Below, one piece after another: positions 21,680 through 21,949 of a DNA stretch of 33,373 nucleotides. A program made the translations under genes and the position numbers. The stretch comes from Octopus bimaculoides. Lineage: Eukaryota. Position 1 is the first letter of the stretch; every line of letters starts with the position of its first letter. Below the pieces are notes generated by a model. It searched no databases, was not told the DNA's origin, and saw nothing but the letters and a program-made list of their open reading frames with translations. The stretch spans positions 171,779,395 through 171,812,767 of the forward strand of contig NC_068982.1 of the NCBI RefSeq assembly GCF_001194135.2, read 5' to 3'.

Positions 21680-21887
21680 GTATGTTTGTGTGTATGTAAA
21701 TATATATATATACATAGTAACATAGTAATGTATATATGCCAACAGAATGTAGCAGCCCTATAAAAGACTATGTTACTGTTGTTTTAGCCCCAGGAAAACT
21801 TCTTTTCCAGCTGGTTATCGACACACAGTTTGTGTCCGTATAGCATTTGCAAGGGGGGGGGGGCATCGCTCCTATCTCTAGCCTTAC

Positions 21888-21945
21888 GTGATACTCACAG
21901 ACTTAGGTTTCTGAACGTTATCCGTCCTCAGTGTACGGATGTATT

Positions 21946-21949
<4 letters not shown>
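21888..21949 (-). ncRNA. Type I hammerhead ribozyme motif (HHR2)
   Basis: Minus strand reads GTG-CA-ATAC-ATCCG-TACA CTGAGGA C GGA-TAACG-TTC A GAAAC CTAA GTC TGTG-A-GTAT-CAC. Core CTGAGGA = 21925-31, GAAAC = 21907-11, GUC = 21900-02. Stem I has an internal loop; stems II and III are short. Confidence 0.65.

What the first reader, a model, noticed from the sequence alone, without database searches (positions are those of the whole stretch)
21737..21949. A second hammerhead element on the opposite strand is a diverged homologue of the first, with covarying hairpins: candidate retrozyme-like family
Seen: the 160 nt after each predicted cleavage site (16316-16474 on +, 21899-21737 on -) align at roughly 60-65% by eye and keep the same structure. 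Hairpin 1 is GGCACA-5nt-TGTGTC versus GACACA-5nt-TGTGTC. Hairpin 2 is CCTA-[3-nt bulge]-GGAAGC/GCTTCC-TAGG versus CCA-[3-nt bulge]-GGAAAA/TTTTCC-TGG, which contains three compensatory double substitutions. Both continue GGGCTAAA(A)CA(A/G)CAGTA, a third hairpin and ...GTTGG. Neither copy has coding capacity. Established: non-autonomous HHR-bearing retrozymes produce small circular RNAs in plants and some metazoans, including a bivalve. Inference: a dispersed, structured, self-cleaving RNA element family of cephalopods that I cannot match to a named family. Two copies within 6 kb suggest a high genomic copy number.
Basis: partly seen in the sequence, partly recalled or inferred. Interest (0 to 1): 0.9.

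Follow-up and report, generated by a model that had tools for sequence, protein, structure and literature searches.

The report
Two old hammerhead-ribozyme repeats in octopus DNA
The window holds two diverged, non-coding copies of a mobile element that carries a classical self-cleaving hammerhead ribozyme plus a conserved three-hairpin RNA domain; this is an octopus member of the "retrozyme" kind already known from corals, mussels and salamanders, so it is real but not a new kind of thing.

Summary
A generic type I hammerhead descriptor hits only 16285-16315 (+) and 21931-21900 (-) in the window, and nothing in 1000 shuffles. It also finds the annotated ribozyme in four experimentally tested retrozymes.

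- **Ribozyme:** both copies keep every core nucleotide. Helices I and II differ in sequence but still pair.
- **Resemblance:** the architecture matches the coral, mussel and axolotl retrozyme ribozymes. Copy 1 shares GAAACAUGUC with axolotl Ax330.
- **Downstream homology:** about 120 nt after each ribozyme is 64% identical (z about 14). It folds into the same hairpins, with four compensatory double changes. The first 40 nt or so after the cut do not align.
- **Copy 1:** the ribozyme caps a strand-specific hairpin of about 50 bp.
- **Copy 2:** it is 5'-truncated and slightly decayed.
- **Negatives:** no protein domain anywhere in the window, no pol III boxes, no tandem unit, no third copy, and no Rfam hit.
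- **Source:** the window's other repeats match Octopus vulgaris DNA, so it is octopod.

Best reading: these are solitary relics of a non-autonomous, hammerhead-bearing retroelement of the non-LTR retrozyme kind. Cleavage, circles, copy number and the autonomous partner are untested. It is a new member of a known kind, of modest interest.

The parts
21737..21946 (-). Copy 2, whole element (about 210 nt). It is bounded 5' by (TG)n and 3' by TA-rich simple repeat, and is 5'-truncated relative to copy 1.
   Evidence: Sequence; homology to copy 1; flanks match only microsatellites.
21894..21937 (-). Copy 2 type I hammerhead. Helix I is CGUACA/UGUGAG (5 of 6 paired). Then CUGAGGA, helix II C-GGA/UUC-A with loop UAACG, GAAA, and helix III AC-CUAA-GU. 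C17 is 21900 and the predicted cut is 21900|21899.
   Evidence: Loop 3 is not palindromic; it is one base away from a palindrome.
21857..21893 (-). Copy 2 variable spacer after the cut, containing a run of 11 C. It is not alignable with copy 1.
   Evidence: z -0.3 for the first 40 nt.
21739..21836 (-). Copy 2 conserved central domain. Hairpin 1 is 21836-21820 and hairpin 2 is 21814-21790. The block GGGCUAAAACAACAGUA is 21790-21774. Helix 4 (21781-21776 with 21745-21740) encloses hairpin 3 (21770-21753). GUUGG is 21743-21739.
   Evidence: covariance model, 141.9 bits.
16230..16474 (+). Copy 1, the visible part of the element (245 nt). Its 3' end is lost in the assembly gap at 16475-17150, and its 5' boundary is at or before 16230.
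16279..16321 (+). Copy 1 type I hammerhead. Helix I is UUCAGG/CCUGAA (6 of 6 paired). Then CUGAUGA 16285-16291, helix II C-GAG/CUC-A with loop CAAAGA, GAAA 16306-16309, and helix III ACAUGU (palindromic). C17 is 16315 and the predicted cut is 16315|16316.
16230..16368 (+). Copy 1 long imperfect hairpin: 5' arm 16230-16284, 3' arm 16316-16368. It extends helix I to about 50 bp and puts the ribozyme core at its tip.
   Evidence: MFE -107.3 kcal/mol, z -7.4; 40 Watson-Crick pairs, 5 G.U, 0 A.C; sense -107.3 vs antisense -81.3 kcal/mol.
16371..16470 (+). Copy 1 conserved central domain. Hairpin 1 is 16371-16387 and hairpin 2 is 16392-16420. The block GGGCUAAACAGCAGUA is 16419-16434. Helix 4 (16427-16432 with 16464-16469) encloses hairpin 3 (16438-16456). 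GUUGG is 16466-16470.
   Evidence: covariance model, 139.9 bits.
16475..17150 (.). Assembly gap of 676 N that hides the 3' end of copy 1 and any following unit.

Best explanation
Both loci are solitary, old, diverged copies of one non-autonomous, non-coding retroelement family of an octopus genome. The family belongs to the metazoan non-LTR retrozyme kind, meaning hammerhead-bearing repeats associated with Penelope-like elements.

**RNA layout (shown from the sequence)**
- A canonical type I hammerhead with helix I of 6 bp, extended in copy 1 into a hairpin of about 50 bp.
- Helix II of 3 bp plus a C.A closing position.
- A very short helix III with a palindromic loop.
- A variable spacer of about 40 nt after the cut.
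- A conserved domain of about 100 nt made of hairpins whose pairing has been kept through compensatory changes.

**How it most likely works (inferred by analogy with tested retrozymes)**
1. In a multimeric or read-through transcript, two ribozymes pair through the palindromic ACAUGU of helix III.
2. They cut after GUC, leaving a 5'-OH and a 2',3'-cyclic phosphate.
3. Unit-length RNA can be closed by the host tRNA ligase RtcB into a small, highly self-paired circle.
4. That RNA is copied back into DNA by the reverse transcriptase and endonuclease of an autonomous Penelope-like element.

The conserved central hairpins, including the AC-rich hairpin 1, are the best candidate for the recognition or priming module. 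As single units, the two copies in the window could at most cut a host transcript. Copy 1 looks intact. Copy 2 looks dead.
For: **The ribozyme is real in architecture**
- The core pattern occurs only at the two sites, against 0.23 expected.
- The full descriptor gives 2 hits in the window and 0 in 1000 shuffles.
- The same descriptor finds exactly the annotated ribozyme in coral Amil224, mussel Mg353 and axolotl Ax353 and Ax330. Those sequences come from the PMC7229834 supplement.

**Selection on the fold**
- All 14 constrained core positions are identical between the copies, although the flanking helices and loops differ.
- Helix I has 3 compensatory double changes and helix II has 1, in a register fixed by the core.

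**Retrozyme type rather than Penelope minimal type**
- Helix sizes are the same as in the four tested retrozyme ribozymes.
- Copy 1 against Ax330 gives z 5.4, with identical GAAACAUGUC and loop 2 CAAAGA against CAAAAA.
- A mismatch closing helix II has a precedent: the U.U pair of the active axolotl HHR_Amex2 (PMC7229834).

**Central domain**
- 64% identity, z 14.5.
- Of 29 pairs, 17 are invariant, 4 changed on one side, 4 are compensatory and 4 are broken. 93% of cells are paired, against about 40% when partners are slid.
- Stony-coral retrozymes show the same conservation pattern: the ribozyme plus a central region (legend of Fig. S2).

**RNA-level, strand-specific structure in copy 1**
- The fold has z -7.4.
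- Sense folds at -107 against -81 kcal/mol for antisense.
- All 5 transition mismatches in the long hairpin are G.U on the ribozyme strand, and none are A.C.

**Mobile and non-coding**
- Homology stops at the element ends and the flanks are unrelated.
- No Pfam domain is found in the window, and the translated element has no protein relatives.
- GC content is 0.42-0.47.

**Literature**
- Dispersed monomer copies are common for such families, and the families are related to Penelope pLTRs (bioRxiv 10.64898/2026.07.22.740005).
- In an Anolis Penelope-like element, reverse transcription starts in an AC-rich stem-loop about 85-90 nt downstream of the hammerhead cut (PMC11167929).
Against: - Only two copies are known. 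There is no third in the window and none in 45 kb of other cephalopod DNA.
- No head-to-tail unit was found next to either copy, so the defining tandem arrangement is unshown. The gap after copy 1 leaves that copy open.
- No Rfam hammerhead model matches, even at E<=10 on 230-245 nt slices.
- Helix II closes with C.A instead of the usual G10.1-C11.1.
- Copy 2 has a non-palindromic loop 3 and a G.A mismatch in helix I, and its fold is not exceptional (z -1.2).
- With two sequences, covariation statistics are weak: shuffle control 30/500.
- My descriptor was written after I had seen the sites.
- Cleavage, circles, transcription and the autonomous partner are all inferred.
Confidence: 0.72

Rival explanations
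1. The two loci are 5'-truncated terminal fragments (pseudo-LTR ends) of an autonomous Penelope-like element, not copies of a dedicated non-autonomous family.
For: - Penelope elements carry hammerheads in their terminal repeats. Most genomic motifs occur as single, probably truncated, copies (PMC4209133).
- In Anolis PAc, the insertion ends about 110 nt past the ORF start, close behind the ribozyme (PMC11167929). That geometry resembles 'ribozyme plus about 160 nt' here.
- Copy 2 is 5'-truncated, and copy 1 has an ATG ORF starting 12 nt before CUGAUGA.
- Retrozymes and pLTRs are related in sequence in Xenopus.
- Penelope-like (Naiad) remnants are reported in Octopus spp. (PMC8557442).
Against: - No RT or GIY-YIG domain is found anywhere in the window.
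- The 700 nt upstream of copy 1 is unique and not repeated.
- The ribozyme architecture is canonical: helix I 6 bp, helix II 4 positions, helix III present. Metazoan Penelope elements have the minimal type, with helix II of 6-8 bp, helix I of 4-5 bp and no helix III. PMC7229834 (Fig. S1 legend) assigns canonical motifs to retrozymes and minimal ones to autonomous elements.
- The ORF of copy 1 is not kept in copy 2.
- Naiads, the Penelope-like clade that PMC8557442 reports in Octopus, lack canonical hammerheads.
Confidence: 0.15
2. The hammerhead-like motif is a catalytically dead look-alike inside some other structured repeat or non-coding RNA family. The element's biology would then have nothing to do with self-cleavage.
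For: - No Rfam hammerhead hit.
- C.A replaces G10.1-C11.1 in both copies, so the master copy already had it.
- Helix II is only 3 bp.
- Metazoan short-helix-III ribozymes cleave poorly as monomers (PMC4209133; PMC7229834).
Against: - All core positions are conserved between copies that are otherwise unalignable around the core.
- Compensatory changes occur in helices I and II, in a register the core dictates.
- The descriptor gives zero hits in 1000 shuffles.
- Copy 1 is close to a tested axolotl ribozyme.
- An active natural ribozyme with a mismatched helix II base exists: HHR_Amex2.
Confidence: 0.08
3. The similarity reflects a local inverted segmental duplication rather than transposition.
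For: The two copies lie 5.3 kb apart in opposite orientation.
Against: - Homology is confined to the element.
- Flanks on the available sides are unrelated or are simple repeats.
- 36% divergence together with compensatory changes points to separate master lineages under RNA-level selection.
Confidence: 0.02

Closest known systems
Axolotl non-LTR retrozymes Rtz_331 (HHR_Amex1) and Rtz_353 (HHR_Amex2), and newt satellite 2 (PMC7229834)
   Same: - Type I hammerhead with helix I of 6 bp, helix II of 4 positions, and helix III reduced to AC/GU around a palindromic loop.
- Copy 1 has the same GAAACAUGUC string as Ax330, and loop 2 CAAAGA against CAAAAA.
- Copy 2 has the same CUGAGGA box as Ax330.
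- The mismatch at the base of helix II parallels the U.U of HHR_Amex2.
- Non-coding, self-paired RNA.
   Different: - Outside the ribozyme there is no sequence homology.
- The axolotl units are tandem arrays with tens of thousands of copies and proven circular RNAs. Here there are two solitary copies and no expression data.
- Copy 1 has an unusually long helix I of about 50 bp.
Mussel (Mytilus galloprovincialis) retrozyme Mg353 and coral (Acropora millepora) retrozyme Amil224 (PMC7229834)
   Same: - Same ribozyme architecture, detected by the same descriptor.
- Invertebrate host; the mussel is also a mollusc.
- Low GC and non-coding.
- In corals, conservation is concentrated in the ribozyme and a central region, as here.
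   Different: - No detectable sequence similarity beyond the core (z 1.1 and 2.3 for copy 1).
- Their helix II closes with G-C.
- They are tandem and are proven to self-cleave and circularise.
Minimal hammerheads in the pseudo-LTRs of Penelope-like elements (PMC4209133; PMC11167929)
   Same: - Type I topology and a dimer-prone palindromic 15.2-16.2 region.
- An extra nucleotide after A9 is one possible reading of the C.
- Mostly found as single dispersed motifs.
- A structured region downstream of the ribozyme is where reverse transcription starts in Anolis PAc.
   Different: - Penelope motifs have a long helix II (6-8 bp), a short helix I (4-5 bp), usually no helix III, and a conserved G10.1-C11.1 directly flanking G12.
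- They lie next to an RT/GIY-YIG ORF, and none is present here.
Schistosoma mansoni Sm-alpha, a SINE-like hammerhead repeat (named in PMC6155905)
   Same: A short non-autonomous repeat carrying a canonical type I hammerhead. From memory, as a lead only: it too has a 6-bp helix I followed by a UAC bulge, and a CAAAUA-like loop 2, resembling copy 1 (UAC at 16276-16278, loop CAAAGA).
   Different: I did not test Sm-alpha itself. No pol III A or B boxes are found in the octopus element, and I had no sequence in hand to compare.

Membership tests
Hammerhead ribozyme, type I (canonical metazoan form) | Conserved core C3 U4 G5 A6 N7 G8 A9 / G12 A13 A14 / A15.1-U16.1 / H17 | tested here: met
   Both copies have CUGA(U/G)GA ... 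GAAA ... GUC. The pattern is unique to the two sites, against 0.23 expected.
Hammerhead ribozyme, type I (canonical metazoan form) | Three helices in the register set by the core: helix I about 6 bp (open), helix II about 4 bp (closed), helix III 1-2 bp with a small palindromic loop | tested here: met
   Descriptor: 2 hits in the window, 0 in 1000 shuffles, and 4 of 4 positive controls. Copy 1 fits fully. Copy 2 has one G.A mismatch in helix I and a non-palindromic loop 3.
Hammerhead ribozyme, type I (canonical metazoan form) | G10.1-C11.1 pair closing helix II next to the core | tested here: not met
   Both copies have C...A at these positions, followed by 3 bp. A natural active precedent for a mismatch here is the U.U of axolotl HHR_Amex2.
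Hammerhead ribozyme, type I (canonical metazoan form) | Compensatory variation in the helices | tested here: met
   Between the two copies, helix I has 3 double changes and 1 single change, and helix II has 1 double and 1 single. This rests on two sequences only.
Hammerhead ribozyme, type I (canonical metazoan form) | Match to the Rfam hammerhead covariance models (RF00163 and relatives) | tested here: not met
   No hit at gathering score, nor at E<=10 on 231-245 nt slices.
Hammerhead ribozyme, type I (canonical metazoan form) | Loop 1 / loop 2 tertiary contact nucleotides | tested here: inconclusive
   Copy 1 has a 3-nt/1-nt internal loop (UAC/U) after 6 bp of helix I, and loop 2 CAAAGA resembles CAAAAA of Ax330. 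Copy 2 does not keep these.
Hammerhead ribozyme, type I (canonical metazoan form) | Site-specific self-cleavage | not testable with these tools
   Needs in vitro transcription of monomer and dimer constructs.
Metazoan non-LTR retrozyme (PMC7229834) | Canonical, not minimal, type I hammerhead | tested here: met
   Same helix and loop sizes as coral, mussel and axolotl retrozyme ribozymes.
Metazoan non-LTR retrozyme (PMC7229834) | Head-to-tail tandem units of about 150-450 bp, each with a ribozyme | tested here: not met
   The 3' flank of copy 2, the 5' flank of copy 1 and the sequence after the gap show no similarity to the element. For copy 1 the 676-N gap leaves a following unit possible. Monomer derivatives are known for such families.
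Metazoan non-LTR retrozyme (PMC7229834) | Non-coding, GC below about 50%, no LTR/PBS/PPT | tested here: met
   No Pfam domain, no protein relatives, GC 0.42-0.47.
Metazoan non-LTR retrozyme (PMC7229834) | Highly self-paired RNA | tested here: inconclusive
   Copy 1: MFE -107.3 kcal/mol, z -7.4. Copy 2: z -1.2.
Metazoan non-LTR retrozyme (PMC7229834) | Expression as linear and circular RNA | not testable with these tools
   No transcriptome data were available.
Metazoan non-LTR retrozyme (PMC7229834) | Many dispersed or arrayed genomic copies | tested here: inconclusive
   Two copies in 33 kb. None in 24 kb of O. vulgaris or 21 kb of a decapodiform. Prokaryotic, viral and metagenome collections gave 0 matches. 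No cephalopod genome could be searched as a whole.
Penelope-like element pseudo-LTR | Direct repeats flanking an RT + GIY-YIG ORF | tested here: not met
   No RT or EN domain in any open frame of 50 aa or more in 12.2-26.2 kb, or of 55 aa or more in the rest of the window.
Penelope-like element pseudo-LTR | Minimal hammerhead: long helix II, short helix I, little or no helix III | tested here: not met
   Helix II is 3 bp plus a mismatch, helix I is 6 bp, and helix III is present (compared with the description).
tRNA-derived SINE | Internal pol III A and B boxes | tested here: not met
   No A box in either copy. There is one weak B-box-like match in copy 2 (2 mismatches). The neighbouring tRNA-like segment scores for both boxes and serves as a control.

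The most novel reading that the evidence does not exclude
An octopod-specific, still-active retrozyme family whose RNA is cut by a C.A-closed hammerhead and circularised. Its conserved three-hairpin centre would be the docking or priming site for a Penelope-like reverse transcriptase. Its helix I duplex of about 50 bp would make the transcript a natural double-stranded substrate, for example for the RNA-editing or small-RNA machinery that is so prominent in cephalopods.
Probability: 0.12. Interest if true: 0.55.

Novelty: new member of a known kind. Interest (0 to 1): 0.33.

Why it matters
If confirmed genome-wide, it would add cephalopods to the animal groups that carry canonical hammerhead retrozymes. 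It would also supply a family with two useful features:
- A naturally mismatched helix II base, present in the common ancestor of both copies.
- A conserved, covarying central domain. That domain could be tested as the element recognised by the still-unknown mobilising enzyme.

Beyond that, it is an expected kind of repeat. Such elements are widely, if patchily, distributed in metazoan genomes.

Tried and rejected
- **Rfam:** searched on the whole window, on a 6.6 kb slice and on two small slices. It gave no hammerhead. The sub-threshold miRNA hits are microsatellites.
- **MAFFT:** it mis-registers the ribozymes, so I counted the ribozyme helices by script in the register fixed by the core.
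- **Tandem or circular-permutation idea:** the 3' flank of copy 2 against the 5' arm of copy 1, the upstream of copy 1 against the element body, and the sequence after the gap against the element all score at shuffle level. I rejected a shared TAGT at 16226-16229 and 16471-16474 as too weak.
- **More copies:** a covariance model of the central domain found no third copy in the window, L001 or L002.
- **Exact-pattern scans:** the 22-nt conserved block gave 0 matches in metagenome, prokaryotic-genome and viral collections.
- **Protein-word searches:** the translated element and a translated repeat found nothing. Look-ups of two window ORFs were not on record.
- **Sampling cephalopod DNA:** I reached an octopus genome through its rhodopsin gene. 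This gave one 24-kb O. vulgaris locus and one 21-kb decapodiform locus. That was enough to place the window in an octopod but too little to estimate copy number.
- **Coding partner:** Pfam on all open frames of the window gave nothing. Three attempts to pass raw six-frame references failed on stop codons.
- **Homology with tested retrozymes outside the ribozyme:** none. The GGGCTAAAA string shared with Ax330 did not contribute to any significant alignment.
- **Literature:** one literature search was wasted on too-broad terms. The supplement of PMC8557442, which lists cephalopod Penelope-like consensus sequences, is not held.
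Full report
**What is there**

On the minus strand, 21946-21737 reads as follows:
- a (TG)n run, then 15 unique bases;
- CGUACA-CUGAGGA-C-GGA-UAACG-UUC-A-GAAA-C-CUAA-GUC, with the predicted cut between 21900 and 21899;
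- UGUGAG, a C-rich spacer, three hairpins and GUUGGCA;
- TA-rich simple repeat.

On the plus strand, copy 1 reads UUCAGG-CUGAUGA-C-GAG-CAAAGA-CUC-A-GAAA-C-AU-GUC, with the cut between 16315 and 16316. CCUGAA follows, then the same downstream domain up to GUUGGUAGU at 16474, where a 676-N assembly gap begins.

**Is it more than chance?**

The core pattern CTGANGA-N7-17-GAAAC occurs only at these two places in the 33 kb window. Chance expectation is 0.23.

I then wrote a full type I descriptor with these requirements:
- helix I with at least 5 of 6 positions paired, directly abutting the core;
- helix II of at least 3 bp, with at most one spacer base;
- a 15.2-16.2 pair around a 2-6 nt loop;
- U followed by H at the cut.

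It hits only these two sites and nothing in 1000 dinucleotide shuffles. It was written after I had seen the sites. As a control, I ran it on four experimentally validated retrozymes whose sequences are printed in the supplement of PMC7229834. It found exactly one ribozyme in each, at the annotated cut.

**Homology**

BLAST aligns 16353-16470 with 21856-21739 at 64.5% identity over 121 columns. The local score is 27, against 8.1 +/- 1.3 for shuffles (z 14.5). The 36-43 nt just after the cut are not alignable (z -0.3). The ribozyme stretch alone is only weakly similar as plain sequence: 13 of 1000 shuffles do as well.

**Evidence that the ribozyme fold is selected**

All 14 constrained core positions are identical in the two copies, while N7, the helices and the loops differ. 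The register is fixed by the core, so I had no freedom in choosing it.
- Helix I goes from GC GC AU CG UA UA to AU CG AU UG (GA) CG. That is three double changes, one single change and one break.
- Helix II goes from GC AU GC to GC GU AU.

**Which kind of hammerhead?**

| Source | Helix I | Helix II | Loop 2 | Helix III segment |
|---|---|---|---|---|
| Coral, mussel, axolotl (tested) | 6 bp | 4 positions | 5-6 nt | AC/GU around a palindromic loop of 2-6 nt |
| Octopus copy 1 | 6 bp | C.A + 3 bp | CAAAGA | ACAUGU (palindromic) |
| Octopus copy 2 | 5 of 6 paired | C.A + 3 bp | UAACG | ACCUAAGU (not palindromic) |

- Copy 1 shares GAAACAUGUC with axolotl Ax330, and its loop 2 CAAAGA compares with CAAAAA there. 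The local alignment to Ax330 has z 5.4.
- This is the canonical architecture that PMC7229834 assigns to retrozymes. It is not the minimal form of Penelope terminal repeats, which has a long helix II, a short helix I and no helix III (PMC4209133; legend of Fig. S1).
- One deviation: helix II is closed by C.A instead of G10.1-C11.1 in both copies, so their common ancestor already had it. The axolotl HHR_Amex2 has a U.U at the same place and still cleaves.
- Rfam's hammerhead models do not score either copy, even at E<=10 on short slices. Membership therefore rests on the descriptor, the covariation and the comparison with tested ribozymes. It does not rest on a curated model.

**The downstream domain**

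I specified hairpin 1, the two-part hairpin 2, hairpin 3 and an enclosing helix 4, and counted 29 pairs.

| Class | Pairs |
|---|---|
| Invariant | 17 |
| Changed on one side, pairing kept | 4 |
| Changed on both sides, pairing kept | 4 |
| Broken in one copy | 4 |

- 93% of cells are paired, against 38-45% when partners are slid by 1-3 columns.
The fourth is in hairpin 3.
- With two sequences, the shuffle control can only reach 30/500. This is suggestive, not proof.

**Copy 1 has an extra feature**

16230-16284 pairs with 16316-16368, which puts the ribozyme core at the tip of a hairpin of about 50 bp.
- The fold has MFE -107.3 kcal/mol and z -7.4.
- The arms show 40 Watson-Crick pairs, 5 G.U and no A.C.
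- The ribozyme strand folds 26 kcal/mol better than its complement.
- This points to selection on the RNA of that strand rather than to a decayed DNA palindrome.
- Copy 2 lacks the 5' arm; a (TG)n run begins 15 nt before its core. Its fold is unremarkable (z -1.2). Its loop 3 is one base away from a palindrome. It looks like a 5'-truncated, decayed copy.

**Context**

- No open frame in the window has a Pfam domain, so there is no reverse transcriptase or GIY-YIG endonuclease nearby.
- The 57-codon ORF running through copy 1 is stopped in copy 2 and has no relatives.
- The element has no pol III boxes, whereas the adjacent tRNA-like segment has both.
- Flanks are unique sequence or microsatellite, so this is an insertion-type repeat and not a segmental duplication.
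- A covariance model of the central domain finds no third copy in the window.
- There is no evidence of a neighbouring unit at either copy.

**Where the window comes from**

I reached an Octopus vulgaris chromosome through its rhodopsin gene. The window's other interspersed repeats match that 24-kb locus at 71-91% identity, so the window is from an octopod. That locus and a 21-kb decapodiform locus contain no copy of the element. That is far too little sequence to estimate copy number. The prokaryotic, viral and metagenome collections gave no matches, as expected.

**Interpretation**

The best reading is two solitary relics of a non-autonomous, hammerhead-bearing retroelement of the metazoan non-LTR retrozyme kind.

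The mechanism is inferred from tested relatives (PMC7229834):
1. The ribozymes cleave as dimers through the palindromic helix III in multimeric transcripts.
2. RtcB ligates the unit-length RNA into a self-paired circle.
3. A Penelope-like enzyme copies that RNA back into DNA.

Recent work ties retrozymes to Penelope terminal repeats and reports many monomer derivatives (bioRxiv 10.64898/2026.07.22.740005). In an Anolis element, reverse transcription starts in an AC-rich stem-loop shortly downstream of the ribozyme (PMC11167929). That makes the conserved AC-rich hairpin 1 and its neighbours a reasonable candidate for that role. This last step is inference only.

The main rival is a truncated terminal repeat of an autonomous Penelope-like element. 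It is disfavoured by the canonical ribozyme architecture and by the lack of any coding remnant, but it cannot be excluded without the genome-wide family.

**Novelty**

Within the searchable library I found no paper describing hammerhead repeats in cephalopods. The only paper that mentions both topics substantively treats Naiad Penelope-like elements, which lack canonical hammerheads. Such repeats are nevertheless widespread in metazoans, bivalve molluscs included. This is a new member of a known kind, and the finding is real but of modest interest.

Noticed in passing
window 19721-20168, 20865-21269, 26332-26750 (family A); 5924-6124, 13041-13232, 13662-13824, 24073-24491, 25935-26061, 29767-29965, 30055-30132 (family B): Two families of interspersed SINE-like repeats fill much of the window. 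They match repeats at the Octopus vulgaris rhodopsin locus (L001) at 71-91% identity, which places the window in an octopod genome.
   Followed up: partly
window 21540-21612 (-): A tRNA-like head lies about 125 nt 3' of copy 2, behind (TA)n/(CA)n. It has an A box (TTGCTCAGTGG) and a B-box-like GTTTCGATTCT. ARAGORN calls no tRNA, and the segment is unique in the window. It is probably the head of a separate SINE.
   Followed up: partly
window 18680-18920, 21270-21345, 21660-21740, 22040-22150: Sub-threshold Rfam hits to mir-297, mir-466 and similar families are (TG)n/(TA)n microsatellites folding on themselves, not miRNA genes.
   Followed up: yes
window 4948-5104, 10216-10905, 16475-17150, 20292-20445, 22581-23095, 29091-29114: Six runs of N (assembly gaps). 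The third begins immediately after GUUGGUAGU of copy 1, so it hides that copy's 3' end and any following unit.
   Followed up: yes
L001 5972-5997 (-) and 21780-21804 (+): Two CUGANGA...GAAAC core matches lie in 24 kb of O. vulgaris DNA. The first, like copy 2, is preceded by a (TG)n run. Both fail the full hammerhead descriptor and have no downstream similarity to the element.
   Followed up: partly
window 21716-21734 with 21759-21777: A 19-nt inverted repeat (84% complementary) pairs the hairpin 3 region of copy 2 with the TA-rich sequence just beyond GUUGGCA. It is unclear whether this is part of the element's 3' end or chance in AT-rich DNA.
   Followed up: no
window 16273-16446 (+): A 57-codon ATG ORF starts 12 nt before CUGAUGA of copy 1 and runs through the ribozyme and central domain. 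The frame has a TAA in helix II of copy 2. No protein relatives were found.
   Followed up: yes
window 21851-21863 (-): A run of 11 C lies in the spacer of copy 2 where copy 1 has UCUCCCC. This is a homopolymer expansion within the element.
   Followed up: no
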